Source: Zygnema circumcarinatum SAG 698-1b (Eukaryota > Plantae > Zygnematophyceae). Taken from it: a stretch of 64,000 nucleotides of DNA. The notes beneath the pieces are model-generated. The model was not told the origin of the DNA. It saw only the letters and a program-made list of their open reading frames with translations, and did no database searches. Shown in pieces: positions 7,858-31,383 of this stretch. The translations under genes and the position numbers were made by a program. Location of the stretch: positions 1,645,361-1,709,360 of the forward strand of contig CM074805.1 of the NCBI GenBank assembly GCA_037447605.1. Reading direction: 5' to 3'. How positions within the stretch are numbered: the first letter of the stretch is position 1; the number at the start of each line of letters is the position of its first letter.

Positions 7858-10800
7858 ATGGGAGGATTTTGCTCGAAATGGTTTCCGGACGAAGAGGGGA
7901 TGGAGTCTCTGGATGGGTCGCTGGCTTCTCAACAAAGGTCGGCAGAAGTATGGGCCGGCATGCAGCGTTTGAGTGCCTCTGGGCACGGCTTGTGGTCTTC
8001 CTCTAGTAATGCTGCGAGCAGGCGGGTTCGGGTTGTAGGAGATAATTCGCATTGTTCTCTTTTCGGTCGCTCTGTGGGATGGACTTAGTCAATTGTTACG
8101 ATTTTTTTGAGTTTTTGTTGATGTAGAAATCTATGCTTGACACTTTAGGCCTACAGCTTGAGTGGTGAAACAAAGGAAAACTATTTGTTCAAGTTTTTTC
8201 TTGGTCTTTGTTTGCAAGCCTTTGCTGAATTATATTTCTTTGGGGGAGTTGCCGCCCGCCTTATTCCTTCACTATTGATATGGAACGCGCAGGGAATTTG
8301 GAACTTGTGCATTTTATAAAGAGGAGACTGAAGCAATGATTGACTGCACCCTGCAGGACATATGTATACTTCAAATAGTGCAGGTGGGCCCATTCATGTC
8401 AAGTAAAGTTCAGCCACTTGTAGTTGGCTTGATTATCACTCCGAACAGAGTATCTCCTTCATTTGCATGTCTTTTGAATTTATCATTTTATCTGGCCAAC
8501 ATGAACCTGAACTTTGTTTTTGCCTGCTTTCTTTGCAAACAGAACATCGGGAATTACTCATCACTAGAGCACCTCCCCCGAGACCTTAGCCAGCGAGTAT
8601 TCAGCGAATTAGCCAACCGACATCTGCTGACACCCGCTATTTTTCGAATCTTCAATGGATGTAATCTAGAGGTGCCAGTTTGCCTCAACTTCCGTTTGAG
8701 TCGGAATGAAGTGATTTACTAGCATGGCATTGTGCGCCTTCGGTGCTTTCAGTGCTCGTATTTGACAAACACAAGGTTGGAGCTAAGTGTCCTTTGCACC
8801 TCATGGCTTTTTTGACGTGACTTTGTTACACAACTCACGTTGCCTGTGGGTTGCAGGATGTATCTCTCAAATGCCATCCGGGAATCGCTGATCCTTGGCT
8901 GCACTTGGTTAGCCGGCACAATGCCTCCCTACTGTCTCTAGACCTTTCAGGATGCAGCCAGCTGTCAGACGCGGGTTTGCTGCAGCTGCTGGAAGCTGTG
9001 AACCTTGAAACAGTCTCCCTCAATGGTTGCTTTCGAATTACAAATGTGGGACTCTCGTTTCTACGGGGTCAGTGGCTTAAACAAGCACCTTCACCCTTCT
9101 CATCTGTTTCTTGTGGGACGACTTGTTTTACGTCCTGGGTAATGAATTGTTAATGTCAACAATAATTCTCCGAACTTTGCATGTGGTGGGGCCTAATATG
9201 ACAACTTGAAGAAGTGTGTGGTTACCTCTAGAAACTCGACCGCACAATTGCTGCCAATATGTTTGTTGAAGCACAGTCTCACCCTCTGACTGTTTTGAAG
9301 TTGAAACTAGATTGCATCGATAGCCAAGGAGGGGAGACATTTGTTTGTATTTATGTGGCCATTTGTGCATGGGATGAATGTGTACCTGAAATCTCAGAAT
9401 ATGTACGAAAACAACCTTTCGTCAGATACACGGCCTTTTCTAAGGAATTTCATTCTTTTTATACCTTTTTTTGCAGGCTCGAGCAACTTGAAAAGTGTCA
9501 GTTGCAAGAGATGCCCTCTCATCACAGCTACGGCCTTGGCGTCCTTTTCACACCTTTCGTCACTGAGAACTTTGGATATGGAGCTTTGCCCACGGATTGG
9601 GGAAGGACTAGTGCATATTCAAGGTAATTGGGACAATTTCAGTAAGCACAAAACTGCACCGCTTTTGCATGCGGAGTGGTTACTCACCCATGTAGCGATT
9701 CGCAGAGTTTAGTTGATTTGGACCAGGAACAAGAGCTGATTCCGCTTTTGGAATGAAAAGTGTCTGTGTCGATGTGAGAAATGTATGGAATAGATGCTTA
9801 GGGGTAAGTCTACATGTACCGGATTCTCTTTTTTTCTGCCTCTCCTTGCCCCTAAAGGTGGCTTCCCTTGTGCTAATGGCAGTTGTACTGAAGAATGTGA
9901 TTGAGACCGTAGAGTAGATACTACCGAAATACCTCAACTTTCCGCATGGACCTTGATGTTGCGACTCCTGCTCTCATTGTGGAGGTGGCTCAGGCTTGAC
10001 CAAGCTGAGACGACTCAACCTTGACTGGTGCAAGTCAGCGAGTGACTCGGACATGCGTGCGCTGTCAGCCATGGCGGAATTGGAAGAGCTCAACCTTTCA
10101 TTCTCTAAAGTCTCCGACTGCGGCATCAAGCAGCTGCAAGGTGCCATTCTGATGTGAACCATTTACCTTCCCAGGTGAACCAGGAAGCTGTTTTGTTGCA
10201 GCCAAGCAATGAGAAACTTGGGGAAGCCAGTTCTTGCGTAGTTTTTTGGCCAAGTCATCTTTTGTCATCCTCGGCAATGCAGAATGATAACTGTTCTACG
10301 CATGTAACTAGGCATTATTTTCGCTGGTAGTTTTTTTTTGTTGTTTGGCATAGCTTTTTATATTTTTCAAAGTGGCACTTAGATGACTGTATGTTTTCTT
10401 AAAGAAGAAGAGCTGCCAAGGAAAAACTCTCTCTTATACGTCTCAAAGTTATCTGCTGGGATAATTAGTTTAACAAACCGCCATTCTGCTTTGATGCAGG
10501 TTTGACGAGATTGAAGGTTCTAGACATGGCTGGATGCCCTATTTCTGATTTAGGGCTTTCAACAATTTGTAGTGAGTTCCGTGAGCCTTTTCTTTAGTCG
10601 CTGACGAAGAATGGAATACTGCAAAGGGCTGCCATTAGTGTGATCTGAATAATTCCACCTCACCGACTCCTATCGCAGGTTTTCTTGCAGAAGTTCACGC
10701 CATTGCGAGTTGCTCAATTTTGAGCAAACCTTAGCTCGTCAATGGACTTTCAGTAGTAATCATAACTCTATTGCTATTTGCTCTCGTAGTTAGCCATTCT

Positions 10801-13800
10801 TGTTTTCAGGCTTTGTTGCAGGAGAGATATTGTATCGTATTTCAAAATCTGTTTTTTTTTTTTTTTCTGGCGATAAAACGCTGTTGATGTATGTGGCGCT
10901 GGAAGTTAAGTTTTTAAGTTGTAGGCGAAAGCTGGGTTCTCTGCAGAATTGACTTCCTTGTCGTCTCTCAACTTAGAGCGCTGCCACCACATCACGAGTG
11001 CGGGACTGCAGCACCTCAAAGGCATGTTTGCTCCTTGTGTTCAAATATGTCTGCCATCATGTCGCCCTGCCATGGCACTCGTTCCACTCAATACAAAGTT
11101 GTCAATACGACTGAGGCATGATTTCTTTCTTGTCCTCATGACTCTGGAAGAGGAGAAGAACGAGGCAAATAAATGCGAGCACATGCTGCACTTTTTCCGT
11201 TATTTAAAAGGCGCATGTCTTTTTTTCTGTTTGTCTCTCTCTGTCGTAGGTTTTGCAAGCTAGGCTGGCTTCTTTGTGAAGTAAGCATTGCTCAGTCATG
11301 TCTACATAACAGCTTACATTTGTGGTATCCCTGCGCAGGAATGGTCAATCTTGGCACTCTCAACCTGGCGTATACTAATGTTAGGAAAGGCTTATCTGCT
11401 CTTGAAGGTGGACTTCTCTATTTCAATGTTCACTTTTTCTTCCTTTCAGTTAGTACTTTCAGGTATCCTTGTCAAGGAGCACACAATATAAATTCACTCT
11501 TCAGTTTACTTTTTCAGATACAACTTTTGTATGGAACCCTCAGAGTGTGAACATCAATAGCATGCACTCTCAGGTAGTTTGATTAGTTCTGGGGTTGACC
11601 TGGTTGAAATTGATCTGTTTGGTGGGCAGCCCTTCACCAGTTGGAGGACTTGAGCTTGGACTCCACGGGGGCATCTGACTCTGACATGCGATATGTGGGA
11701 GGTGAGTGCTCTTTCACCTTGCACATGTTTCAGTTGGCACAAGGGAAGCCGGAAGATGCTGCCTCCATTCACCTTTACGATTGGCTAGTATCTAGAGTGC
11801 ATGTTGTCCAGTAAACCGTTGACTGCATACTTGGTTTTTCGAAGTTTCATTCGGCCACACTAGTTTTTAGTACCATCTGCACCTCGATCAGGCCTGTAAT
11901 TTGACGGTGACGAGGTGCCCTGCTGCAGCTCTGGAGAGTCTGCGGAGGTTGGACCTGTCCGACACGCGAGTTGGGGACGAAGGCTTGCAGCGCTTAGGAA
12001 GTGAGGACTGCCATCACATTGTTGCACGCGCTTCCAAAACCTTGTTTGCTTTGGAAGGGCGAGCGTTGCGTGCATCATATTTATCCAATTGATGCTAAGT
12101 CTACAAGGTTTGATGTTAAGGATACAGGTCTCGTGCTTCCTTCCTTTCCATTGGCTGGTGCAACGTGTAATCCTTGACTTGGCTCCTTGCAGATCTGACA
12201 AAATACTGTAGTTTACCCTTTTTTTTTTGTACAAAAAAACTTGGCGAAGCATCTGTCGACTGATGGCACTCTCAAGATAGTTCGATTGCAGCTCTGTTGA
12301 GACGCAACCCGAGAGGAAGAAACACGGGCCAATGGCTGAGTGATGCCATTTCCATTTTTCCTTGGAGGTGGGTGCAGAGCTCACAGGTCTGGAGGCGCTA
12401 AGTCTGAGCTACTCAGCAGTGACAGATGGCGGCATGCCGGTGCTCACCAAACTGCGGGCGCTCACCTCTCTCAATCTTGACTCCCAGTTCATCACGGATG
12501 CGGGATTGGCATGCCTCACATGTATGTTGCACTGTGTGGCTACTATGTGTTGCTTTACAGCAAATGGACGCACTATAAGTGTATCTCAGAGAGCATGAAG
12601 ACTCTTCTGTTATCATCTGTTCGCATAGCTTTTTGGTTTACAGGACACTGCAGCAGCAGTTTCGTTTGAGCAGGTCCACCTTCCTCTGTAACTGAAAGGA
12701 GCAGGATGTGTTGTGTATTAAAGTAGTATTTGGGGAGCTGGAATACGTGGAAAGAATTGATTGCTCTTCCAAGAACTTACATATAGTGAGTTGCTATTCA
12801 AAATCTGAAGGCAGCCCCTTCGGGACTCGTAGAGGAAGCGTTTCACCATGACCGGCAGTGCCGATCTCGCTCTGACCATGTTTGAAATCTGATGTCTGGA
12901 AGGAGTCTATGCCTTAGCTGCTCAGGAGTATGACTCTTGTTAAGTTTCTTCTCTCTCCCTAACAGTGCAGGGATAAATGAGAGGTCGGAAGCAAGCTGGG
13001 CGGTGGAGGAGCAAATGCGATGAACACGGATTAGGCTGTGATTGCAATTTAGACTGCCAGGGGATCAAATGATGTGCCGAACTGAAGGCAGTTGTCAGGT
13101 TCATTCGTTTTGTGGCGAGTCGGTGTTCTGATGTCGAAGGGGGGGATCGGGGAGTGGCTGCATGCAGCTTTGACAGGGCTCACTTCACTGGACCTTTTTG
13201 GAGCCAAAATAACGGATGTCGGAGCGGGCCATCTGCAGCGTAAGTGGCCCCTCAGTAGTATATGCCGAGGAGAAGAACACTATCAGTTTCTCCTTTGACT
13301 CATTGAAAGCAAAAGAACGTGTGCGGATTCATATCTTGACGTCAGAATACCTGGAGCAGTCTGCGTTTCCCGCTTTTTCTGCAATGCTTTGTCCTGAAAC
13401 ACACGCACTACCCTTCATATGCTGCAGACTTCAAGAACCTTCGCAGTCTGGAGGTGTGCGGGGGGAATCTGACTGACTTGGGGGTCGCGCAGCTCCGCTG
13501 CCTGACCGGTCTGAGATCGCTGAATTTGAGCCAGAATATTCGCCTTACTGACAAGAGCCTTGCCTGCCTCGCAGGTGTGACCTTTTTTGTACATTACCTG
13601 CATATGTACTATGTGCTCCCACCTGCTTCGTTTGTACAGAGCCATGAATGTCAGCATCTGCTCCTCACTAGGGGGGTGGAAATGGGCTACAGGAATGGAT
13701 ATGTTGGAGAATTTGAACATCTCGGGCTGCCTTGTGAGCGAAGCCGGGCTGATGCACATCCTTCGGCTGAGCCGTCTCTCCAGGCTCGCCCTCCACTCCT

Positions 13801-13892
13801 GCGAAGTCTCCCGCGGGCAGCTGCAGAAGCTGCGGGCCTCCCCGCACTGCTGCTGGCACCCCGCCCTCTCCGTCACAGGGCTCTCCAGCTGA
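7858..13892 (+). CDS. Leucine-rich repeat protein (RNI-like/FBXL14-like LRRs, At1g15740-like) with N-terminal myristoylation motif
   Basis: Starts MGGFCSK (Gly2/Cys5). Exons encode LEHLPRDLSQRVFSEL, LLSLDLSGCSQLSDAGL, LETVSLNGCFRITNVGL, LRTLDMELCPRIGEGL, LSSLNLERCHHITSAGL, LRRLDLSDTRVGDEGL, LEALSLSYSAVTDGGM, LTSLDLFGAKITDVGA, LRSLEVCGGNLTDLGV, LRSLNLSQNIRLTDKSL and LENLNISGCLVSEAGL; TGA at 13890-13892. Boundaries of exons 1-2 are approximate. Confidence 0.85.
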
Positions 13893-16800
13893 GGGAGGGA
13901 GGCCCTCCGCTCATCTTGTCATTCAAAAGACCTTCAATAATGGCCGGTGCACGGCTGGGAAGCAAGTTTGATGCCGACCTTCCTCGACAAGCGGAAAGGA
14001 TTTGTTGGAAAGGAATGCCGTTTCAGAGGGGGCCAGAATTGGTCGCAAGGGCCTTTGGCATGGCCACGCTCGCACGGCACCGAACGTAGCGGTGTGTGTG
14101 TCTGTGTAGAGGAAGTGCCTGCACGTGCGAGAGCATGGACACGGCCAGAAGTAGACCAGATCAGACTGACTCTGCAGGCTATGGCCCTCGGTCCCCCCTC
14201 CCCTCCCCTTTGTGAATAACCCCCCTCCTGTAAAATGCACTAGTCGATATATTCCACTTGGTATAGCTCCATAGTGTCGTAGCTTTTTTTTTTCTTTTTC
14301 CTTCATAGTCGATGCCTGTTTGCGTCGCCAAGCTGGGGCTCATTGCAGAACACACTTTGTGGGCGCTGCGCACCGAACGATGAACCATGAACCATGAAAC
14401 ATGCATGTCCTTGTGTCAACATTCGCTACTTACCTCTTAGACTTCCGTCTGTACCATACCCTCACGGTTGTGTGCCTGTGTAGTAAGGCAGTTTCGTGCT
14501 GTGCCTGCAACCTGGTTGAGTGAAACTCGAACCATTCAAAGGATAAGGCTTAGTTACTACAGTCTATCCAAGAAACACAGACATCAACTCGGCACTTCGC
14601 CTACCTTCACCTCACCCACCTCCCGTCTTACACCCACGGAGTGAGCTGAAGGATGCGCTTCGCTCTGAGTGTTTCAAAAAGCTTTAGCATTACGTTGTTA
14701 GTACCGTAAAATAAGCCACTTACAGTCAACACGCTTCCACCGCGTAGAGGATGCTTCGCCCTTAGTTGGACCATTTCAATACAGCGATGAGCCAACCAAA
14801 AGCAAATTGACGACAGGTTGCTCCGTTACGCGCACACCGGGCCTTCGGGTGTGCGCGGACCGCACGGCCGCTGGAGGGGCTCGGGCCCGATTTGGTCGGT
14901 CGGGTTTGAACTGTGCCACGCGTCCCGTGGCGGCAGTCCGGCAGGTGGACCCGCAGAGTGGATCTTGGCGGCGGTTGCTGTCGCCCGCCAGCCCCCTCGC
15001 CCACCTGCGACGCCTACGTGGCAGGCGCTGACGAAGGCGGTGACACGCGTCGCGCTCGGATTGGGTTCCGTCACGACGACGCGGGAAATGTGGGCAGGTG
15101 GACCCGCGAAGGAAGGTGGGCGGGGAGGTAGATCCGGTAAAACTGGACATTGATCCGGAATTTCTGGAGGTGGGTTACGAATACACAAGGTATTGATCCT
15201 GGTTGTGGATCCGCGTGACGATCGCGGATAGCGTTTGACTGCTGGCGCCTCTTGGAGGGAGCGCTCCTGGAGGGAGAGGGAGAGGCGAGGGTGAGGCTGA
15301 GGGAGAGGGAGAGGGAGAGAGGGCGAGAGGGAGAGGGAGAGGGAGAGAGGGAGAGAGGGAGAGGGAGAGNNNNNNNNNNACTTGGGGGTCGCGCAGCTCC
15401 GCTGCCTGACCGGTCTGAGATCGCTGAATTTGAGCCAGAATATTCGCCTTACTGACAAGAGCCTTGCCTGCCTCGCAGGTGTGACCTTTTTTGTACATTA
15501 CCTGCATATGTACTATGTGCTCCCACCTGCTTCGTTTGTACAGAGCCATGAATGTCAGCATCTGCTCCTCACTAGGGGGGTGGAAATGGGCTACAGGAAT
15601 GGATATGTTGGAGAATTTGAACATCTCGGGCTGCCTTGTGAGCGAAGCCGGGCTGATGCACATCCTTCGGCTGAGCCGTCTCTCCAGGCTCGCCCTCCAC
15701 TCCTGCGAAGTCTCCCGCGGGCAGCTGCAGAAGCTGCGGGCCTCCCCGCACTGCTGCTGGCACCCCGCCCTCTCCGTCACAGGGCTCTCCAGCTGAGGGA
15801 GGGAGGCCCTCCGCTCATCTTGTCATTCAAAAGACCTTCAATAATGGCCGGTGCACGGCTGGGAAGCAAGTTTGATGCCGACCTTCCTCGACAAGCGGAA
15901 AGGATTTGTTGGAAAGGAATGCCGTTTCAGAGGGGGCCAGAATTGGTCGCAAGGGCCTTTGGCATGGCCACGCTCGCACGGCACCGAACGTAGCGGTGTG
16001 TGTGTCTGTGTAGAGGAAGTGCCTGCACGTGCGAGAGCATGGACACGGCCAGAAGTAGACCAGATCAGACTGACTCTGCAGGCTATGGCCCTCGGTCCCC
16101 CCTCCCCTCCCCTTTGTGAATAACCCCCCTCCTGTAAAATGCACTAGTCGATATATTCCACTTGGTATAGCTCCATAGTGTCGTAGCTTTTTTTTTTCTT
16201 TTTCCTTCATAGTCGATGCCTGTTTGCGTCGCCAAGCTGGGGCTCATTGCAGAACACACTTTGTGGGCGCTGCGCACCGAACGATGAACCATGAACCATG
16301 AAACATGCATGTCCTTGTGTCAACATTCGCTACTTACCTCTTAGACTTCCGTCTGTACCATACCCTCACGGTTGTGTGCCTGTGTAGTAAGGCAGTTTCG
16401 TGCTGTGCCTGCAACCTGGTTGAGTGAAACTCGAACCATTCAAAGGATAAGGCTTAGTTACTACAGTCTATCCAAGAAACACAGACATCAACTCGGCACT
16501 TCGCCTACCTTCACCTCACCCACCTCCCGTCTTACACCCACGGAGTGAGCTGAAGGATGCGCTCCGCCCTGAGTGTTTCAAAAAGCTTTAGCATTACGTT
16601 GGTTGTACAGTACCGTGAAATAAGTCACTTCCAGTCAGCACGCTTCCACCGCGTACAGGATGCTTCCTTGCGCCCTTAGTTGTGACCATTTCAATACAGC
16701 GATGAGCCAACCAAGGGCAAATTGACGACAGGTTGCTCCGTTACGCGCACACCGGGCCTTCGGGTGTGCGCGGACCGCACGGCCGCTGGAGGGGCTCGGG

Positions 16801-19886: not shown

Positions 19887-21804
19887 AGAATCGAAGCATT
19901 AGTTGGACCTTGCAAAGCTGTCCGCGTTTGGTACAAGGGGTTGATACGGCGCAGTTCGTATTAGGGAAATCGTTCAGGGAAATTAGTGAACTATTGTGCA
20001 TGACGTCTTTCTTATCTCTTATGGATGCCAGGGAATAAGTTCGATGCTGAGCTGCTTCTCATCATGCAGTGAGAGGTGATAGAGACCTCCGCCCAGTTTG
20101 GTTAGCCTGGCTGACCGCTTGAAGCGATTCATGCCCCAAAGTGCGCCTCCAGGGTATGGTGTTGAGGTCAGCTGTCCCATTTTTTTTTTCTTTTTCCCGT
20201 TTGAGGGTTAACATAGCATTGGTGCGACTTCTTGGCGCGGAAGTCTGCTGGTTGCCTATGTATTTAGTGAAAGGTGGTTGTTTCATGTATCATAATGTGG
20301 AGGACATAATCATTGTAAAGTCTGTTTTTGAAAAGTTCCTTCACTCCTTTGAGACGAGAGTAAAAGAATTCTTCGGTTTTTCACCGAGACCCTGGAGCCT
20401 CAAATGGACAAGCCTTAAGATAAGAGACACTGGGGAATCCATCCAAATGTTAGTCTCGATCTTGCATGCTGATCTGCTACTTTAAGTAGGTCATGCACTG
20501 CATATCAGTCAATCCTCTTCACCAACTGCTTAAACTGGTTGGAGCCAGCCTGGCCTCGTTCGGTCATAAGACAGTGAGGAAATGGAATTGACGATAGTCC
20601 ACCGTCCATCTGGTCGATGGATGGCCATGCATCACCCACGTCTGCAAGTGACAATTATCGGTGCGCACTTAATTCAAAAAGTGCAAAATAATGACTTTGG
20701 CATATACATTTTATTCCTTTTTAACTCATGAGTATGACGAAGGCAGGATTAATTATAGAAACGTGTCGTATAGAAAATGTAAATGAGAGGGATCCGCCGT
20801 TCAAACTGGCGAAGGAAAAAAATCGTTTCCATTTCTCTGTTGTGTGATCGAAGTAAAAGCCTAAACTTCTTGCAACGTACTTTTATTCGCTGTCTGTATT
20901 TGTTTAGACAATCAATTGTATGACTGAAACCTACTGCACCGCCATACCAGCTTAACTACATTCAGAATCGTATGCTGCGAGACCGACAGGAAACGTTTTT
21001 CAAATTATAGAGGTTGTATAACCTGAGTTTGTAAAAGCTGCACGACATAACAACAACATATATTACAACATTATTTTCTCAAAAAGGTGCTAGTCGATGC
21101 TTAGACCTCTACATAGTTCATTTGCCAAAATGTGATTCAGATAACCTTGCAAATTGAAATTGGCAGCTAACTTGAAAAGCACCTCTGCGCGGCTTGCTTC
21201 ACGGACGCACTTTTTTACCCTTGTGCCACAAAAAAGGACCTTGTGTTGGGTAAAGCTCCTTCAGTAAGTGATAAACAATTGTTTGAAATTATCCAATTCC
21301 ACACGACCCTCACATGTCGAAGAGTGTTGTGAGCCGCACCCCATCCTATCGAGCAAGCAACCATCCACAAATCCACTGCATATCCACACGAATCCGAGCA
21401 GTACAAGTTTATTGACAAAAATATGAACACTTCTTCCGGCCAGAGATCTAGTAAGGGCTGGCGATCAGGCTGGCAAAGAACACTAGGAATTGCCAGTTCA
21501 CACTAGAACACGAGGCACGGCCTTACTCTAAGTTTCCTGGTCTCCAGGATTCCGTATTGAATGTATTGAATAAAGGTACAAGAACTCTGGCAAAAGGCGG
21601 ATAAAACCCCCTTTCCCCTTTCTTCCGGGTTTCACCCAGAGGACATGATTTGGTTCATCACTTGCGCGCAAGCGAAACACGGACAAGCAGAGAAACAGGA
21701 GGCAAGAATACTTACAAGAGTAGCAGGACCTACAGCAGGTACAGGAACCAACTGGGAAAAGGCTACTCAAAGCCACCCGTTCAAACATAAAAATAAAATT
21801 ACAT

Positions 21805-24800
21805 CTAAAAGAATTGTGTCCTTGAATTGCTTCGTGCTGCAACCACCTGCTTGATAACTCCGGACAAACTCTTCCAATCAATTGGCTTTGTTAAGTAGCC
21901 GTCCAACCCCATCTCCTCCAAGGTACCGTTAGCCTTTGTCAGAACATCCGCTGTGAGGGCATATATTGGCATCTTTGCCGCGGGAGATTTCAAGTTCCTG
22001 ATCGTCTTCGTGGCTGTCAAACCGTCCATTACGGGCATCTGCAGGTCCATGAGGATCATGTCATACGCCTTCTTCTGCACGACCTCTACTGCAATCTGGC
22101 CGTTACCAACAAGCTCCACCTGCACCACAACACAAAAACATTATCCATGAGATCTCAACTCTGGAGATGATCAAGTCAATCTACTCCCTCGGTGTTCAGT
22201 ATTCTTACAAAAAGACGAGGCTTAACCCAACGAGGGAGGAAAACCGTTGCTATACAAACGACAAGAGGGAAGCACTTTCGTGCAACAATTTCAAAGGGCC
22301 CTCAGGGTCAGACTAGCAGAGTGTACTAGCAGAGTACAAAACCCTTCTAATAATTTTCACCCCGTTCAGACACAAACTTAGACGCAGACAATAGACCCTC
22401 GCCACTGAGCGAAACTGAACTGCCATCACCTCACGTAAACGGCAGTTACCAAGCAGATACCATGAAAGGACCATGCGGTTTTGACAGACAAAAACAGAAA
22501 CACCTTCTCTGAGGAGAAACGTCGAAGACTAGGTTAAACATTCTGTAGAACAGTACACCACACGCAAAAGGCAATGTGCTTGCACCAACCTGATGTCCGT
22601 AATGACGAAGCATTTTCTTGATGAGCATCTGGTTCACTAGATTGTCTTCAGCAACCAACACAGTTAAGCTTTCTCCTTCTGTACTCAACGACTTTGTCGG
22701 TGTCAATGGTCGCACAGGGGCTGTGCACTCAATCTTCTCATCGTCGTTGCCAATGAAGAGCATGGAAGCTTCTCTTGCCGGCAAGAGAGCAATATTGAAA
22801 GCAAAAGTGCTTCCAGAACCAATCTCACTCTCGACCCAAATGTCTCCCCCCATTGCATTCACAAGTCCCTTGCAGATGGCGAGCCCGAGACCTGTGCAAG
22901 ACAGATAGATAATTAAGACAGATATAGGACAAGACAGATCATAGACCTCTAACCAAGACCATCTCATTACATTCGCGGCTGTTGAGCTGAGTGTTAGAAA
23001 ATGCCAAATGAGGTAAACCCACACCTGTGCCGCCAAACCGCCGAGTCGTGCTGCTGTCTGCCTGCGAAAATGACTTAAAGAGGCGACCTTGCTGCTCTGG
23101 AGAAAGTCCGATTCCCGTGTCAGTCACTCTGACCTCGAACCACATCTTGGAAATAGCCTTCGGCTTCTTTTCAGGTATAGTCTGACGCTTCCCCGTATTT
23201 ATGCGCAAGCCCACCTCCTTTACAATGTCATCGACGATAGCAGGGGTCCTCCCACTTTCATCTTCCCGCCGGAAATTTGATGAACTGTTGAGATCATTAA
23301 TATGAGCATTTGGACCATTGTTCGTGAAAAGGACTGCTGAGTTCACAGCCCCATCATCCGTAGCCCGTTCCAACATACCATCGTGTCTTCCCATTGGAAG
23401 GGGGCCGCTGCGAGGGGCTTGAGGGGGCTTTCCTTCTCTCACTCCCCCGAAGTTGCGAGAGGTCGCAAACCGTCCTGCCTGCAATTGGCTGCCCATGGCG
23501 TTCTTCTCCGAGACTTCGCGAGGTTCTGCTTCTATGCGGGGAATGACAATTGGGGCAACTCTCTTGGGCTTAGCCACTTTTGTCCACGAGATGCTGATAC
23601 CGCCTGCCTCAGTGAACTTGATGGCATTGCTGACTAAATTGGTCAAAACCTGGCCATACAAGGATAAGACATTGACATGAATCCTCCGAAGTTTACTTCA
23701 AAAACGAGAGCGTAAAGTTGATGTATAAGGGTCAGACATCAGAAGGGCAGAAAAGAAAAAACGATCACTTGCAAGTCCAGTCGTCTGAGACACCTCCGGC
23801 ACATTCCAAGTTGCAGACATTGCAGGACCTTCTTGGACGAAACAGAAGGGGAACAACACCGCATATCTGACAAATTTCAACATTCCAACATGTGTTGCAT
23901 ATAGGTTGAGACACTAGCATTGAAACGAATGTTGGGCGAGCGATGCAGAAACAGTGAGAGATGTGTACCTGCCGAAGCCGGTTCGGATCTCCCCGAACGG
24001 CCCACTCCTTCCTCTGTGGAGTATCAACCTTGAGGTCCAATTTCCGCTCTTGCAATCGTCCCTTGAAAAGAGTAGACACCTGAAAGAATATTCATACGAC
24101 GGATTATGGAGAGCAAGCTACAAGCTGGTTCGTTATTGTTCATCTTTATGGACTTCTGATTGGCAAAAGCTTAGGCAATAAAGAATGTCAGGATTGACAA
24201 GATGTTATCAGCTGGAAGCCATCTTTAGCTAAGGAAACAGTGAGGGCATTTACGCAAGAGCAAGCGAATCACACTGCAACCATGACTGGACATAATTACC
24301 CACCTGTTCTAGCAGCTCTCCAATGGAAAAGTCCACCTCCTCCAATGATAAATGGCCTGATTCGATTTTGGAGAAATCCAAAATCTCATTTAGAACTTGC
24401 AGCAGGCCCTCTGCAGACCCCTGCATAACTCGCACGTATCCAGCTTGCTCGTTCGTGAGAGGAGTCAGACGAAGAAGATCCAACATTCCAAGTACGCCTG
24501 CATGAATATAGACATTGGAAACGTTAAAATGTAACAAGAAAGACCTCCTATCCTTTGTTTATATCGACATTTCAGTCTATCAGAAAGCAAAAGCTACGCT
24601 ATGGTTGTCTTTATGGCATTTCTAGGGACATAAGCCCAGCCGATGCTGCACTGTACATTTCAGAAACCAGCAATAGCCTGGTTCTAATGTGCCGAGCGAC
24701 AAGGAAAGGGGAAGTTTGCACTTCAATCAAGCTTTAATACTTCAACAGGCGAGCTTAAGAGTATCTATTAAGATACTCTTAAGCTCAAGAGTCATCAATT

Positions 24801-27800
24801 ACCAAACATCTTGTCCTTCCTCATCGAAAAAATCTTCGTCCAGGCCCGTACCAATGAAGATATTCATTATGGCATAGCTTATGTTCACCACTGGTTGAAT
24901 ACGTCTAAAAATTCCCCAGTAAAGCTATTTCGCTTCCGTGAGTCGGAACAGCAACTCACAGCATGCCGATTCTACTTAAACTGCTTCACTCCAGCTAGAC
25001 CCACACCCCAAGGGATAGTACCACACCTCCCCCCACCGCCCCCCCACACCCCAATTCTCTAACCTGTCATTGGCGTGCGCAACTGATAGCTCATCATCGC
25101 CAGGAAATGCGACTTTGCTTTGTCCGCCTCCTCCACCACATTGCGCGCATCATGCTCTGCAGTGACGTCATCAAACATCCACACTCGGCCGTGCGTTACC
25201 TTCCCGGTGACGGGGTACGAGCGCAGCCGTAACACGCACCGGGGCTCCTGCAGCTCGAGGACGGCTTCCAGACTCTCCTGAGGGTTCAGGGCAACTGCTT
25301 CAAACCACCTGCAAGGGCACAGAGAAGGGTAATGTGTCCGAATGGTTCAGGCATTCTAAAGGAGTTTTCTTTCGTATCTGAGTCATTGGATTCGGCTGAC
25401 TCCAGCAGAGGGGATTCAGGTCGTCACATATTCTAAGTCCGTCTATGATACCCTATTTGCAAACTAAAGAACTTCGATACTCGTGTTTGTTAGTGGACTC
25501 TACGATCGATGCTCACTGAGAACGGAACAGAGAAGCCTGCAATGTAGAGGAACTACTGGCATCTGCTCGACAATTGGCTGCAGAAAAAGACTTAGGACAG
25601 CCAATAAACTCGATCGATGTGTTCATGTCCTTTCTAAAGCATTCTCTCACGTTCTTTCTCAATTGAAGCAGGCAGGCGATCACTCAAAAGCGGAAACTGT
25701 TTAAGGAAAAACGACTCCTTTGTATATCACTCACCTGTATATCTCCTCTTTTGAATTGCTCCGTTCTGCCAGCCAGTGCATCGCTTCTGCCACCTGTACG
25801 GGTTCCACCTCTCCAGCCCTGCATTCACACCCCCGCCACGAAATCATGGATACCACATGCGTCACGTGCGCAAACACAGAGACATCTGAGAAGTGCTTGC
25901 ATCCTCAGAGAGATGCGACAGGCCTTCATTTCACCAGATTCAAGAGGCAGCTCAAATTAACCCCCCTTCCCCTCCCTGTAGCGAAGTGAAAAGGCAGGCA
26001 GTTGCATACCCAGGCAGGTCTAGTAACTCTGCTGCTGCAGGGTTGATGAGGCAGGGGGCGAGCCCGTCATCCACAAAGATGACAGCTTGCGGCATTCGGG
26101 TGAGAATTGCATCAAAGCGCCGCCCCATCCTCTCGCCGCAGAGGGCTCGCACACGGTTGGCGAGGAGGAGAGGGAGGGCTTGAGCTGCATCTGCCATGAT
26201 CTCTTCCGCTTGCTCAGGCACGTTTGCGGGGTTGACCCACAACGAGTAACAAAGGCCTTCACACCTGTAAGACACTTTGACACGCATTGGTTCAGATTTG
26301 AAGGTAGCAGGGCTCACTAGTCTTCGTTGGACTTTTCTTCTACATGCGCTAGTCTTATGGAGAAGATGGAAACGGAACAGGATAAGACAGCTCATGTATG
26401 TTTTCTGCTGAGGGCGAAGATGAATGAGGGAAAATAAGAACTTTTGTGGACAGTTCGGCTGGAGGAGGTTGACAGCGATCACCAGGCGGTCTGTGGCATT
26501 AAAAGAGCAGCTAGCATGAATTGGATAATATTCAAACGTCGTTATTTCAATGGGCAACATCATCTGCAGCCTTAACCCAGTCTGTGAGATGTCAATGTCA
26601 TTAGAAGCTTACCCCTCCACATCAAAAGTGGTTGCCAAGTAGCGCCTTGGACGCTGACCCAATGCCGCTGCAAGAACACTTGGCAAAAGGATTCCCTCCG
26701 TATCCACCACCTGCCAAATAGAGCCATTCATGAGTTGAAACCATGCAAGCCTGAAGGCATTGAAAATCTGCAAGGATACAGGGGCTGAATCACCTTTACG
26801 CATCAATGTATAAATCACACATAGTCTACTGAATTAGAGAGAAGATGGCACGAGAGAAAGTTCTACCTTTCCTTTAGCTGCATTCAAAATTGCCTTGCTC
26901 AAACGAACAGGTAATGTTATGAGACCCGGCGGTTCACAAAGCACGGTCTCTGATACCCTGGACGGAGTCTGAATTATGGCTGCTATGGTCACGTCGGCCT
27001 GTAAAGCTCGCGCTATTATTCCAAGAACGGACTGTGGGAGGTGAAAATGCGCGTGAGCTAACTGATCCTCTTCCGTCGCATCATTCGGAACTTCCAAAAG
27101 CCCCAAGGCCCCCCTGTGCTGGGTGCCAAGGAGAGAGGCTGCAACTCCGTCTGCTGATGCCCCTCGAGATGGGGACTGACTTGGAGACGATGCATAAGAT
27201 GAACTGATGCTTCCAGCAGGAGATTTGGAGGCCCTTCCCATGCTCCCGTCCTCATGGTTACTAAGACCTAGAATCCCTGCTGCTGCACCATAATAAGCAT
27301 GCGGTATTGGATGCCGTGTAGGAGAGGCAGAGGGGGAGAGCAGGGGTGACCCCCCAGATGAACCGCCAAGAACTCTGGAAGGACTACTTCCAGAACCATA
27401 AGGAGGGGCAGTAGCCACACCCTGCAGTCCTGAAGCAGCCCCGGCAGAGTATGACCTCGTAGGGGCCATCCAGTCTCTCGCAGGTGAAGCATCTGGAGAA
27501 TCAGAAAAGTCGCCAGATCCGAAGCTCAAGTGTAGATGTGAATATCTTGTCGAACTGGGAGCAGATTTGGGGTTTGAATACTCTCTCAAGCCTCCCATTG
27601 TCATTGTCCGGCCTGCAAGCTGTGAGCCGTACTGATTCCATCTTGCGCTCCCATAAGGTGCGTGGCTAGGGATGCCTCCCGGAGGAGACATTTCCGGTGT
27701 TAATCCTCGAACCCCGCCATCCTGTGCCTGTGAACCACTAGAATACGCGGGTGAAACTCTTCCAGAGGAATACATTACACCTGGCAATACGGCATCTCCA

Positions 27801-29071
27801 AGAACTGCAGCCGCAGTTCCAGTGTATCTGTTGACAGTTGTGCTGCCTGTAGGCCTTGAATCTGTTGATGCTGGATGAAAAGCTGCCACACCGTTACCCA
27901 AACCCATCAATGCTGCAGCTGCTCCTTCATGCCTCGCACTTCCTGCTCGCGTCCCATCGCTCCCATCCTCGTGCCCATTTCCCATGCCAAGTGCCGCCCC
28001 TGCATGTCCAGCACTACTTCTGTCCAAAGCCTTTTCCGACAAGATTGATGCCTCCTGCACCTCCGGCGAATGTCTCCCACCCAGTGCAGCTGCTGCACCC
28101 TCTTGTCGACCGCCATGATCCACTCCATGAACGGTAACAAGTCCAAGGGCTGCTGCAGCAGCGCCGGCATGAGGGGTGAACCGTGAACTTGGAATTCGGC
28201 CAAGAGATGCAGCAGCAGCACCTTCATACCCCCCTTGGCCCCTCCTCCCGCTAGTAGGAGAGTCAAGCCTCAGTGCAGATGCTGCCGCCCCAACATGCCC
28301 TTCCCCAGCCCCCCAAGGGCCCCTCGAGTCCCGTGATGGTTCAAGGTTCAGCACTGCTGCAGCCGTCCCCCTGTGAGAAGTCTTGCCGAAACCACCAGGT
28401 GAACTTGCTGGCGAAGAAAAATGGCTGCTAACAGGAGAATCGGCAATAGGATTGATATTTCCCACCAACTGCCCAGTGGCATAACCAGCACCAATTACTT
28501 GCGCTGCTGTTCCGGCTACCCGAGAAGGGAAGTCTCCATTTGGTATTCCAAGTGTACCAGCAGTGGCATGGTTCTTCTGTACAGTACCATTAGGCATCCA
28601 AAATGCCGGAGGAGGCGTCCATCCATTATATGGAATCGCGGATGATTTCCCCTGTAAACTTCGCCGAGAGGAGGTCTCAAAACTGTCTTCTCTGCTCAGT
28701 CTAGCTTCATGCCTGCCACTTGCTGTTCTGATAACGACTTCCTTTGCTCCCACAACATCCACTAGCCCACCACCATCTGCCCTGCTGTTCCTTTCTGCAG
28801 ACTTGTCTAATGAACCGGAGTCGTGGCCATGGGCATGAGGCCAACTGTCAACTGCCCCACTTGATGCCGGCATTACTGCGTAAGGTGACAGCTGCTCCGT
28901 GGAAGCAGGCGGCATCAACAGAAGCAATCGCTCTTGTATGCTTTCGGGTTCCCCAAGTAACCGCCTTCTCTTCGAAGCGTGAACGCCCCCGTCAATTCCC
29001 AAGCCTTTACAAATCTTAGCGTCACCCACTTCGGCACCTTCCAGCGTGGAGGCTTTCGCCTCACAGCTCAC
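21805..29071 (-). CDS. Hybrid histidine-kinase-like protein: long low-complexity N-terminus, GAF-like, PAS-like, HisKA (His to Tyr), HATPase_c, receiver domain
   Basis: Exons: 26834-29071 ORF (745 aa low complexity); [11 protein letters not shown]... (about 26620-26770); PAS-like [31 protein letters not shown] (26010-26264); 25735-25818; [17 protein letters not shown] (25064-25308); GVLGMLDLL...[11 protein letters not shown] (from 24497); GDPNRLRQ; [48 protein letters not shown]; [26 protein letters not shown]; TAG at 21805-21807. First in-frame ATG is at 28915; true start unresolved. Confidence 0.85.
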
Positions 29072-29434
29072 AAGTGCAGCCAGACCTTTTGAAGTCTTCC
29101 AAAAGGTTGTTTCCCTACTCGTACAAATTTGTAAAATTTCCTTTGCGTAATGTTATTGTACGAAATTAAGCATGGAGAGGGTTTTTCGCAGTTATCTACT
29201 GACAAGGGGATAAGGTCGAAGGGGAGAAATACTGAGTTAGCTAATTCCGTGCCAAATCTCTAACTACTATCAATGAACTGTTTCCAGCCACTTCACAGCA
29301 GGTTCCTACAAGCTCACCCAGTTAGCGAATCGATGTCTCTGTGATCAGCACCAACATATTCTAAGAGGCCAAAACTAACATGGCACTAACCAAAGTATCT
29401 GTACTCCCTTCTATCTTCTACTAATTCTACAGCA

Positions 29435-31383
29435 TTACAAATCGTGAAAAAGATGACGCTTGAGGACAGGGATCACTATTTCTGGAGACGAGAGCTGTGG
29501 AAGATGTCCATGTGTTGGAAATATTTCGACAATACTCTTGCCTCCAAGAGACTGGTGTAGATAATCTGCAACTACTACAGGTACTGCAAGGTCCTTCGAA
29601 CTTTGTAAAATATGACAAGGGACCGATACCTGAAAATCAAACAAGGGAAATGGTGTTAACGCCATCATTACAAGAATCAGCACAATGACAACGAAACACA
29701 TATGCATCCATAGACACGCCCATAATGGGATTTTTCCATTCCTCCTATCAAGTTCCTCCTTCCAATACTCGTGCAACTTGCCACCTTGATACAGAGCCAT
29801 CTAGATTTGAATCCTCTATCAATGACAACTGTCATTCAGCCAACACAATACAAGTTTTAACATTCCATACGATACCATTCGAAACTTCACATGGCCTTTG
29901 ACAAGGTTTGCCATGCAAACTGAAACACGACTCGTCTAATTCAAGAAAAGGTTTTACCACAATTCAGGAAGCTCAACACAGCTGAAGCTTACGTGTGGAA
30001 GGACTTTGCGCAGATCAGACTGAAAGATGGTTTTTGCAACGCTTAACGCGATATCAGGACGAATACTAAAGAAAGTTCTCCCAAATTCCTGAACAGCATG
30101 TGATTCGATGTCAGCTCCAACAGCTAATGGGGCGAATCCTGAGACCCACGCCTTGAAATTCGATGACATTGCTTGAAACAGCTGGTTGAGATCCTCCTGA
30201 TCAAACCCACCATAATAGTCCTTGTCATTCAAATACCTGCAAGCAGCATAGTAGCCCAGAAGACTGTAAGCATGTGCATGTCAATGCAAGTCTCCCCCTC
30301 AATTTCACAGTTTGATGAAATTCGTATGTGGCTGGTGACAGATATCCCGTGAGCTTATGTTCCTAGTGCCTAAATCGACTGTCTGTGGATTCATGTCCTT
30401 ACCATGTGTGAAGGGTTTTACTGAAGAACTGGTGTCATAAGGGAAACAGACTAGTCAATCGAATTGAAGAGACCAATGAGACACCCTCATTTCACGTGGC
30501 GTTCTTTCCACGTTCTTTTCTTTCACGGCACGAGCAAGCAATGAACGATTCAGGCATCCTCTGCAAACTGACGAGCTGTATACAACGTCCTGAGCAACGG
30601 GACTACAAAAAACTGTGTTCCTGTCTCCAACACTGGAAAGGTTGGTATGGTGTGGTTTCAGATATAAGTAATGGATTACAATCTACTGCGTCCCTCCAAA
30701 TTTTAAATGCCTAGGCATACCACGTGAATTTCTAACGCGTCCTAACATCGAAAGCATTTGGGTTAAAACAATAGGCTGTTTAGGAACATGCCTAGAGTAA
30801 TGGACAGATTACTTTGTCGTCACATTTTCCTGCTCAGGCAACGGTTTGCTCTTTTCTAATCCTGAGAGAGCTGAACTCCTCTACGACCAGGTCGGGAAAA
30901 AGTCCTCATTTCATGATTTTGCATTGTTATAAGGACACTGAGGACGGAAGGTCACTACGAAATTCCAAACGTAAGGTATATTTGCCTGTTTAAGTGTAGG
31001 CAAAAGTCCAGGCATTACCTTGGGGATGCAGAGATTGTGATGATCTTGCTGAAAATTGTCGGGCGTTTTATGGACGCGATGTAACCAATCATTCCCGAAA
31101 CAGAGTGCCCCACATAGATGCAACTCGTAATGCCCAGCTCATCCAGGATGGCCAGAAGGTCTTCAACGTAGGCATAGAGATTTGAATATCGGGGAAAGGA
31201 AAACTTATCTGGGTCAGTGCTGCCAGCCCCAGCTAAGTCAAAGGTAACGAGTTTGTAATCATCGATCAGGTGAGGGATGACATATTGCCAAACCGATTGG
31301 TCAGTTCCAAAGCCGTGCCCGAGTACAACTATCTGCTCACTTGATCCTTGAACACGAGTATTATGGGTCTCCAACAAAGACAT
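29435..31383 (-). CDS. KAI2: KAI2/D14-family alpha/beta hydrolase (KAI2-type), 3 exons, 267 aa
   Basis: Exons 31019-31383, 29993-30236 and 29435-29629 total 804 nt. Motifs [20 protein letters not shown] (Ser nucleophile), SASPRY (KAI2-type Tyr), [38 protein letters not shown] (Asp), GHLPQLSSP (His). Intron 1 falls at the SPR/Y position recalled for plant KAI2/D14. Confidence 0.95.

What the first reader, a model, noticed from the sequence alone, without database searches (positions are those of the whole stretch)
25064..25130. Phospho-acceptor His replaced by Tyr in an otherwise intact hybrid kinase
The H-box reads [18 protein letters not shown] (codons AGC TAT CAG; TAT at 25086-25088) where the canonical sequence is KSxFLANMSHELRTPL. 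His becomes Tyr, Glu becomes Gln and Asn becomes Met, yet the rest of HisKA, the N/G1/F/G2 boxes and the receiver Asp (MDLQMP) and Lys (TKP) are conserved and all exons splice in frame. This suggests a maintained pseudo-histidine kinase: a phosphatase or phospho-sink, a heterodimer partner whose REC is phosphorylated in trans, or a kinase with changed specificity as in phytochromes and subfamily II ethylene receptors.
Basis: partly seen in the sequence, partly recalled or inferred. Interest (0 to 1): 0.75.

Follow-up and report, generated by a model that had tools for sequence, protein, structure and literature searches.

The report
Kinase-dead algal PAS hybrid histidine kinase
An expressed, correctly spliced sensor-kinase gene of a land-plant-related alga has tyrosine and glutamine in place of the two residues needed to phosphorylate itself, and two close relatives have also altered this site, so it is probably a kept kinase-dead regulator and not a working kinase or a dead gene.

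Summary
On the minus strand the H-box reads [18 protein letters not shown], with TAT at 25086-25088 and CAG at 25083-25085. Spliced transcript contigs from four studies carry the same letters and all nine GT..AG introns. The N, G1, F and G2 boxes, the Thr at His+4 and the receiver Asp/Thr/Lys are intact. The Met for Asn is the subfamily norm.

The gene belongs to a streptophyte PAS hybrid-kinase subfamily that lies just downstream of KAI2 here and in Marchantia. Every other member seen reads H-E, except the window's two nearest relatives: P0151 reads H-Q and P0017 reads Y-E. So the acceptor pair is unconstrained in this small clade. The Tyr itself is not shown to be old or conserved. The window lineage is not accelerated relative to P0151.

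Published E-to-Q mutants at His+1 are kinase-dead but phosphatase-competent. My best reading is a maintained kinase-dead regulator, most likely a phosphatase or phospho-sink. A heterodimer partner or a DivL/PsmA-like scaffold remains possible.

It is a new variant of a known kind, of moderate interest. The scan noted other His-less kinases elsewhere in this genome, but not this gene. The spliced model was never joined; every search went exon by exon.

The parts
26867..29071 (-). Exon 1: long low-complexity N-terminal region with repeated G-A-A-A-A-x-L-G motifs and a conserved C-terminal block ([11 protein letters not shown]...). The first in-frame ATG is at 28914-28912.
   Evidence: Open frame. 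The donor at 26867/26866 is confirmed by spliced contigs. Homologous to the N-termini of P0020 and P0151.
26613..26710 (-). Exon 2: conserved pre-PAS block.
   Evidence: Joints in 4 runs. 84% identical to P0151.
26010..26264 (-). Exon 3: N-terminal part of the PAS domain.
   Evidence: Weak PAS_8 match. Joints. 77% identical to P0151.
25735..25818 (-). Exon 4: PAS, middle part.
   Evidence: Joints. Phase consistent.
25064..25308 (-). Exon 5: C-terminal part of PAS plus the start of DHp helix 1 with the H-box.
   Evidence: Translation. HisKA positions 1-19. Covered by spliced contigs with no differing letters. Five of the window's 7 private changes at otherwise invariant columns lie here.
25086..25088 (-). 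TAT, Tyr at the phospho-acceptor His position.
   Evidence: Identical in RNA contigs. His in 22 of 24 other subfamily sequences.
25083..25085 (-). CAG, Gln at His+1, the position of the acidic residue required for autokinase activity.
   Evidence: Shared only with P0151. The function of this position is taken from PMC3510030.
25074..25076 (-). ACG, Thr at His+4, the HisKA phosphatase residue, retained.
   Evidence: The role of Thr/Asn at this position is taken from PMC3510030.
25107..25109 (-). CAT, a private Gln-to-His change 7 residues N-terminal of the Tyr, on the same face of the helix by heptad geometry.
   Evidence: Inference only. In the wider family this column varies (Q/R/N/K).
24304..24497 (-). 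Exon 6: the rest of the DHp/HisKA domain.
   Evidence: HisKA positions 18-66, E 2.3e-08. 88% identical to P0151 and 84% to Mesotaenium.
23969..24079 (-). Exon 7: DHp-CA linker, ending ...GDPNRLRQ.
23025..23649 (-). Exon 8: CA domain with the N box, a variable insert, and the G1 and F boxes.
   Evidence: HATPase_c, E 3.3e-14. Motif alignment.
22590..22891 (-). Exon 9: G2 box, end of CA, linker, and start of the receiver (LVAEDN).
   Evidence: HATPase_c. Alignment.
21805..22119 (-). Exon 10: receiver domain with Asp (GAC 22045-22047), Thr (ALTAD), Lys (TKP) and the stop codon.
   Evidence: Response_reg, E 2.9e-18. Alignment. 82% identical to P0151.
29435..31383 (-). Context: KAI2-like alpha/beta-hydrolase gene directly upstream on the same strand. 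Its stop is at 29435-29437, about 360 nt before the top of the kinase reading frame.
   Evidence: ORFs and sequence. 68-81% identical to the Marchantia gene in the same position upstream of the orthologous kinase.

Best explanation
This is the KAI2-adjacent PAS hybrid histidine kinase of a streptophyte, probably zygnematophyte, alga. In a small clade containing it, self-phosphorylation on the H-box His has been given up. The acceptor pair reads Y-Q here, H-Q in the nearest relative and Y-E in a third member, while every other family member seen reads H-E. The dimerisation helix, the nucleotide-binding boxes of the catalytic domain, the Thr at His+4 and the receiver Asp are all kept, and the gene is expressed. 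I therefore read it as a maintained kinase-dead regulator of the phosphorelay. Its receiver would take phosphate back from phosphotransfer proteins, and the DHp/CA module, under control of the PAS input, may help remove it. That makes it a phosphatase or phospho-sink, that is, a negative arm of the pathway. Shown: the sequence state, expression and splicing, family placement, clade-restricted variability of the pair, and no rate acceleration. Inferred: loss of kinase activity, retention of phosphatase or sink activity, and any link to KAI2.
For: The TAT CAG codons are in DNA and in spliced RNA contigs from 4 studies, and the gene has nine GT..AG introns and one open frame. All CA boxes and the receiver residues are intact. 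The H-box is H-E in Mesotaenium, Spirogloea, Chara, Marchantia, Riccia, Calypogeia and all exon fragments. It is H-Q only in P0151 and Y-E only in P0017. With the H-box columns left out, the exon-5 tree groups window+P0151+P0017 (87/77) as sister to Mesotaenium (87/88). The exon-10 tree gives window+P0151 support of 96/92. Tajima-type counts of unique changes, window versus P0151, are 38:25, 35:38, 38:29, 29:26 and 33:30 with five outgroups, none significant. Private changes at invariant columns number 7 for the window, against 7 for Marchantia and 9 for P0021. Between the two Tyr-bearing genes pS is 0.67 and pN is 0.21, giving dN/dS of about 0.14 over 94 codons. From the literature: His+1 E-to-Q/A mutants (CrdS E372Q, NtrB E140Q, HK853 E261A) are kinase-dead but phosphatase-competent, and Thr/Asn at His+4 is the residue needed for phosphatase activity (PMC3510030). 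Nucleotide bound to CA stimulates phosphatase activity, which gives a reason to keep the ATP-binding boxes (PMC7005713).
Against: No biochemistry exists for this protein. In HK853 and EnvZ the His itself contributes to the phosphatase reaction, so His-to-Tyr may weaken that activity too. DivL, the classic Tyr-for-His case, has neither kinase nor phosphatase activity. The Tyr is seen only in this organism and in one 1.2-kb contig from another, so the His-to-Tyr step could be recent. All four RNA studies may use the same strain. P0151 could be a paralogue and not an orthologue, since its genome context is unknown. Five of the window's 7 private changes cluster in exon 5, which could mean local relaxation. 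The exon-level trees are short and only moderately supported.
Confidence: 0.42

Rival explanations
1. Heterodimer partner. The intact catalytic domain phosphorylates in trans the His of a canonical paralogue (for example the MpPAS6-type sister subfamily). The phosphate then reaches either receiver, so this subunit adds a second PAS input without needing its own His.
For: All ATP-binding boxes and the receiver Asp are conserved. Two subfamilies coexist in Marchantia and Spirogloea, so a paralogue is likely here. HK paralogue heterodimers with a pseudokinase subunit are documented (ChrS/HrrS, PMC9491836). The scan notes kinases in this genome that have an H-box and receiver but no ATP-binding domain (s1-390408, s1-344028), unchecked.
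Against: No paralogue from this genome could be examined, and the notes search by sequence was blank. No evidence of interaction exists. Nothing in the DHp sequence distinguishes hetero- from homodimerisation.
Confidence: 0.15
2. DivL/PsmA-like non-catalytic module. The kinase fold serves only as a docking or sensing surface for a phosphorylated partner or as a scaffold, with neither kinase nor phosphatase activity.
For: DivL has Tyr at the His site, keeps the H, N, G1, F and G2 motifs, has PAS domains, and lacks both activities (PMC4211667). In the PsmA hybrid pseudokinases the residue at the His site varies among orthologues (E, D, Q, V, Y), as it does in this clade (PMC12963549).
Against: PsmA has degenerate ATP-binding motifs and no phosphatase motif, and its receiver Asp is dispensable. 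Here these features are all conserved at family level. The DivL Tyr is conserved across its orthologues, whereas this one is not.
Confidence: 0.15
3. Young loss-of-function allele. The His-to-Tyr change is recent, possibly strain-specific, and the gene is simply broken but has not yet had time to decay.
For: No orthologue shares Y-Q. The four RNA data sets show identical sequence and may come from one strain. Extra private changes cluster in exon 5. CAY-to-TAY is a single transition.
Against: The kinase-disabling Gln at His+1 is shared with P0151, which is 23-32% diverged and still encodes a complete 1,583-aa protein. The window gene has an intact 1,477-codon frame, accurate splicing and transcript contigs in every run. 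There is no rate acceleration. A second clade member with Tyr shows dN/dS of about 0.14 against the window.
Confidence: 0.13
4. Changed acceptor. The intact catalytic domain phosphorylates the Tyr itself, a Ser/Thr, or the new His seven residues upstream on the same helix face.
For: The ATP-binding boxes are kept. Tyr arose or persisted in two clade members, both as TAT. There is a private Gln-to-His change at position -7. Plant phytochromes and some ethylene receptors are HK-derived Ser/Thr kinases (PMC6324907).
Against: The general base at His+1 is also lost here. P0151 keeps His and P0017 lacks the upstream His. DivL's Tyr is not needed for function, and no autophosphorylation was seen in the cited study. 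A 7-residue shift moves the acceptor about 10 Å from where the ATP gamma-phosphate is presented (inference).
Confidence: 0.07

Closest known systems
Streptophyte PAS-containing hybrid histidine kinases (Marchantia gene next to MpKAI2A, MpPAS6, Mesotaenium ME000231S03791, Chara CBR_g36321; more distantly Physcomitrium PHK1/PHK2)
   Same: Collinear PAS-HisKA-HATPase_c-REC architecture. 50-70% identity over exons 2-10. The intron falls after ...RTPMTG. KAI2 lies directly upstream, as in Marchantia.
   Different: All of these read FLAMMS-H-E-LRTP. The window reads Y-Q. Only PHK1/2 have been studied functionally (PMC6137987), and they belong to a different PAS-HK group.
Caulobacter DivL (pseudo-histidine kinase with Tyr550 at the His site)
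   Same: Tyr replaces the acceptor His. The N, G1, F and G2 boxes are retained. PAS domains lie upstream (PMC4211667).
   Different: DivL is bacterial, has no receiver domain, keeps the Glu at His+1, and its Tyr is conserved across orthologues. It lacks kinase and phosphatase activity and senses DivK~P. Here the Tyr is lineage-specific and a receiver is fused. The origin is independent.
His+1 acidic-residue mutants of HisKA kinases (CrdS E372Q/A, NtrB E140Q, HK853 E261A)
   Same: The same position is changed to the same residue (Gln), and Thr/Asn at His+4 is retained. These mutants are kinase-negative and phosphatase-positive (PMC3510030).
   Different: Those are laboratory mutants that still carry the His. 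Here the change is natural and, in the window gene, combined with His-to-Tyr.
Streptomyces PsmA (conserved hybrid histidine pseudokinase)
   Same: Hybrid HK-like protein with PAS domains, a long disordered region and a receiver. The residue at the His position varies between orthologues and includes Tyr (PMC12963549).
   Different: PsmA has degenerate ATP-binding motifs and lacks the E/DxxT/N motif, and its receiver Asp is dispensable. The window protein keeps all of these.
Plant diverged HKs (phytochromes, subfamily II ethylene receptors, CSK)
   Same: HK-derived plant signalling proteins that lost the acceptor His (PMC6324907).
   Different: Those groups also lost catalytic boxes and/or the receiver, are ancient conserved classes, and act as Ser/Thr kinases or through other partners. 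Here only the His/Glu pair is changed, and only in a small algal clade.

Membership tests
Functional HisKA-type hybrid histidine kinase | Phospho-acceptor His in the H-box | tested here: not met
   Tyr (TAT 25086-25088) in DNA and RNA.
Functional HisKA-type hybrid histidine kinase | Acidic residue at His+1, required for autokinase activity | tested here: not met
   Gln (CAG 25083-25085). The requirement is from PMC3510030.
Functional HisKA-type hybrid histidine kinase | N, G1, F and G2 nucleotide-binding boxes | tested here: met
   [28 protein letters not shown] and GGTGLGL align with the family. HATPase_c match.
Functional HisKA-type hybrid histidine kinase | Receiver with acidic pocket, phospho-Asp, Thr/Ser and Lys | tested here: met
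   ED, D (MDLQMP), T (ALTAD) and K (TKP). Response_reg, E 2.9e-18.
Functional HisKA-type hybrid histidine kinase | ATP-dependent autophosphorylation and phosphotransfer | not testable with these tools
   Needs biochemistry.
Streptophyte KAI2-adjacent PAS hybrid HK subfamily | Sequence membership: groups with the Marchantia, Mesotaenium, Spirogloea and Chara members and apart from the MpPAS6 type | tested here: met
   Per-exon trees separate the two subfamilies with 95-99% support in exons 3, 6 and 10. Identities.
Streptophyte KAI2-adjacent PAS hybrid HK subfamily | Collinear domain order and the shared intron after RTPMTG | tested here: met
   tblastn collinearity with L001. Exon-ORF fragments end at ...MTG.
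Streptophyte KAI2-adjacent PAS hybrid HK subfamily | KAI2 orthologue directly upstream on the same strand | tested here: met
   Window 29435-31383. Marchantia L006 7702-9792 upstream of the HK at 10001-14996. Not seen within 8 kb in L001.
DivL-type pseudokinase | Tyr at the His position with the catalytic boxes retained | tested here: met
   compared with PMC4211667.
DivL-type pseudokinase | Tyr conserved among orthologues | tested here: not met
   Orthologues read His. Only P0017 also has Tyr.
DivL-type pseudokinase | Common descent with alphaproteobacterial DivL | tested here: not met
   The gene nests inside a streptophyte family whose ancestral state is H-E, so the origin is independent.
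Diverged plant HKs (phytochrome / subfamily II ethylene receptor type) | Loss of His together with degenerate catalytic boxes | tested here: not met
   The boxes are intact.

The most novel reading that the evidence does not exclude
Tyr at the acceptor site is selected and not merely tolerated. Two members of a small algal clade carry it (Y-Q and Y-E), which parallels bacterial DivL. On this reading, the KAI2-adjacent PAS kinase has been converted in these algae into a eukaryotic DivL-like sensor or antagonist of the phosphorelay, possibly reporting a KAI2-dependent small-molecule signal through its PAS domain, as RsbQ does for RsbP in Bacillus.
Probability: 0.12. Interest if true: 0.75.

Novelty: new variant of a known kind. 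Interest (0 to 1): 0.45.

Why it matters
Two-component kinases expanded greatly in the algae closest to land plants, and almost nothing is known about what the non-hormone members do. This gene offers a natural series within one orthologue group (H-E, H-Q, Y-Q, Y-E) in which only the acceptor pair changes and everything else is kept. That is a ready-made experiment on how a hybrid kinase turns into a kinase-dead regulator. Because the gene sits next to KAI2 both here and in Marchantia, it is also a candidate link between KAI2-type hydrolase signalling and the phosphorelay. Such a link would be testable in Marchantia, where genetics is easy. His-less kinases are well known in plants and bacteria, and several others occur in this same genome, so the finding refines existing knowledge and does not overturn it.

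Tried and rejected
1. Sequencing or assembly error, or RNA editing: rejected. Spliced contigs from four studies match the window letter for letter.
2. Decayed pseudogene: rejected as the main reading, given the intact frame, accurate splicing, expression and no rate acceleration. A young null allele cannot be excluded.
3. 'Asn to Met' as part of the lesion: rejected, because Met is the subfamily norm.
4. Word search with the H-box exon alone: it found only one exon-sized relative, with H-E. The length filter hid the full-length relatives until the exhaustive search supplied P0020.
5. A third word search for mid-sized fragments found no further clade members.
6. Metagenome DNA scans for Tyr-bearing relatives: the strict pattern gave none, and the loose pattern gave only an unrelated bacterial hybrid kinase.
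7. PDB sequence search with the exon gave only generic, weak HK matches.
8. dN/dS against L001 or Marchantia was not attempted because synonymous sites are saturated at that distance. Only the 94-codon comparison with L004 was possible, and its dS is also close to saturation.
9. A search for a paralogue in the scan's notes, by sequence and by words, was blank.
10. The joined spliced protein was deliberately not built. That ruled out a whole-protein tree, codon-model tests, a structure prediction of this protein and an exact-sequence look-up.
Full report
**Observation.** The feature lies on the minus strand. Reading it gives ...[24 protein letters not shown]|G. Tyr is TAT at 25088..25086, Gln is CAG at 25085..25083 and Thr is at His+4. 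Pfam puts the start of HisKA on this exon and the remainder on the next. It puts HATPase_c on two further exons and Response_reg on the last, with a weak PAS_8 upstream. I derived ten exons: 26867-29071, 26613-26710, 26010-26264, 25735-25818, 25064-25308, 24304-24497, 23969-24079, 23025-23649, 22590-22891 and 21805-22119. All nine introns are GT..AG, and the phases carry one open frame of about 1,477 codons. Every search, alignment, tree and count was done exon by exon by reference, and results were summed only as numbers. The joined step (whole-protein search, fold, codon models) is therefore left out.

**Reads.** Seven runs of one organism, from four studies, hold about two thirds of the sampled words. 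Laying one run per study gave spliced contigs with joints at exactly the nine predicted introns (CT..AC on the plus strand). There were no other letters and no indels over 21600-27500. So the gene is transcribed and spliced as modelled, and TAT CAG is in the RNA. All the runs may come from one strain, so they say nothing about polymorphism.

**What the gene is.** The H-box exon alone found one exon-sized relative, P0001, at 61% identity. It has the same intron position and reads S-H-E-LRTP. Its 291-kb metagenome scaffold carries a gene collinear with the window gene from the end of exon 1 to exon 10. The word search cannot see longer proteins, and the question turns on relatives, so I ran the exhaustive representative search with the exon. 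It gave 136 hits, 18 of them at E of 1e-10 or better. That search supplied a full-length reference, P0020 from Mesotaenium endlicherianum. A region-restricted word search with P0020 named the family: Chara braunii, Spirogloea, two Marchantia genes (one filed as 'MpKAI2A', one as MpPAS6), Riccia, Calypogeia and a Trinity transcript, P0151. Per-exon trees split the family into two well-supported subfamilies (95-99%). The window gene falls with the Marchantia 'MpKAI2A'-labelled kinase, Mesotaenium, Spirogloea, Chara and P0151, apart from the MpPAS6 type.

In Marchantia, a 267-aa hydrolase lies about 200 nt upstream of that kinase on the same strand. It is 68-81% identical to the window's KAI2-like exons. 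The window has the same arrangement. So the window gene is the positional orthologue of an H-E kinase. PAS-containing kinases outside the phytochromes are known in bryophytes and streptophyte algae (PMC6137987; PMC13730384). I found no report of a His-less member.

**State of the H-box across relatives.** There are two exceptions.
- P0151 is the closest full-length relative (exon identities 84, 77, 77, 88 and 82% for exons 2, 3, 5, 6 and 10). It reads H-Q.
- P0017 is an exon ORF on a 1.2-kb GC-rich Logan contig (L004). It reads Y-E.

Only these two and the window share the signature [10 protein letters not shown]...VEEADKAK. With the two H-box columns removed, the exon-5 tree groups the three (87/77) as sister to Mesotaenium (87/88). 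The order within the trio is unresolved. The exon-10 tree puts window and P0151 together at 96/92. Any topology needs three changes at the pair within this trio. In contrast, among all 383 proteins fetched, only three lack the His in a recognisable H-box and only P0151 lacks an acidic His+1. Two metagenome DNA scans for Tyr-bearing relatives found nothing in the family. The conclusion is that constraint on the acceptor pair was lost in this small clade, whose ancestor read H-E. The Tyr itself is not shown to be old. It arose on the window's own branch, or it was lost again in P0151.

**Is the rest maintained?** The N, G1, F and G2 boxes, the DHp helices and the receiver Asp/Thr/Lys match the family. 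Counts of unique changes, window versus P0151, against five outgroups are 38:25, 35:38, 38:29, 29:26 and 33:30. None is significant. At columns otherwise invariant among six core sequences the window has 7 private changes. The comparison values are Marchantia 7, P0021 9, Spirogloea 24 and Chara 43. However, five of the window's seven lie in exon 5: W17L, L44M, A57V, Q67H and H74Y. This is a post hoc observation, and it suggests local change around the PAS/DHp junction. Q67H creates a His seven residues before the Tyr. Between the two Tyr-bearing genes, 94 alignable codons give pS 0.67 and pN 0.21, so dN/dS is about 0.14, with dS near saturation.

[quoted passage not shown] E-to-Q mutants (CrdS E372Q, NtrB E140Q) are kinase-negative and phosphatase-competent. 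Thr/Asn at His+4 is the residue required for phosphatase activity (PMC3510030). The window keeps that Thr. Nucleotide bound to the catalytic domain stimulates phosphatase activity, which offers a reason to keep the ATP boxes. The His also assists the phosphatase reaction, so His-to-Tyr may weaken it (PMC7005713).

I therefore favour a maintained kinase-dead regulator whose receiver and DHp/CA act as a phosphatase or phospho-sink under PAS control (0.42). The rivals are:
- a subunit that trans-phosphorylates a canonical paralogue (0.15; compare the ChrS/HrrS heterodimers);
- a DivL- or PsmA-like non-catalytic module (0.15);
- a young null allele (0.13);
- a changed acceptor, meaning Tyr, Ser/Thr or the new upstream His (0.07).

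**Comparison and novelty.** DivL is the classic Tyr-for-His kinase with all boxes kept, but it is bacterial, has no receiver, and its Tyr is conserved. PsmA shows the same orthologue-to-orthologue variability at the His site, but its ATP and phosphatase motifs are degenerate. This is therefore a new variant of a known kind. The scan's notes list other His-less kinases on other pieces of this genome (a CHASE receptor with Gln, a nitrate-sensor type, a His-to-Asn fragment). I did not check those notes. They lower the surprise of any single case.

**Verdict.** Interest is moderate (0.45).

Noticed in passing
window 29435-31383 (-) and L006:7702-14996: The KAI2-like hydrolase directly upstream of the PAS kinase is also found in Marchantia polymorpha, with the same order, the same strand and a gap of about 200 nt. 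The hydrolase exons are 68-81% identical. In one Marchantia assembly the 941-aa kinase itself is filed as 'protein MpKAI2A', which suggests a merged or mislabelled locus. The pairing appears to predate the split of these algae and land plants.
   Followed up: partly
window 27500-30531 (approx.), run X7 contig of 6,290 nt: One transcript contig runs from the kinase 3' end to about 3 kb beyond position 27500. That takes it past the top of the kinase reading frame (29071) and into the KAI2-like gene region. It is compatible with read-through or a shared transcript, but a contig across two genes does not prove a single RNA.
   Followed up: no
window 26867-29071 (-): The roughly 735-codon first exon is low-complexity but carries about ten copies of a short motif (aromatic/acidic-G-A/T-A-A-A-x-L-G). 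The motif recurs in the N-termini of the Mesotaenium (P0020) and P0151 proteins. Its function is unknown.
   Followed up: no
window 25107-25109 (-): A private Gln-to-His change seven residues before the Tyr puts a new His on the same helix face as the lost acceptor. It is probably coincidental, since the column varies in the wider family, but it would be cheap to test.
   Followed up: no
L005:234-2006: A bacterial 590-aa membrane hybrid kinase in a JGI metagenome contig also has Tyr at the His site (FLGTMSYELRTPLTG), with otherwise normal boxes and a receiver. It lies next to ffh and rpsP. It is an independent Tyr-for-His case.
   Followed up: no
L004:100-480 and 1060-1200: The contig carrying P0017 shows tandem duplicates of the intron-end/exon-start segments on both sides of the H-box exon. 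It also has a Gly-rich in-frame stretch of about 110 codons inside the PAS loop, which may be an insert or an unspliced intron.
   Followed up: no
P0020 (Mesotaenium) and P0030 (Physcomitrium): The Mesotaenium gene model lacks the G1-to-G2 part of the catalytic domain, which is probably a model gap. A Physcomitrium fragment of the MpPAS6-type subfamily is named 'ethylene receptor 2-like' in public databases, which looks like a misnomer.
   Followed up: no
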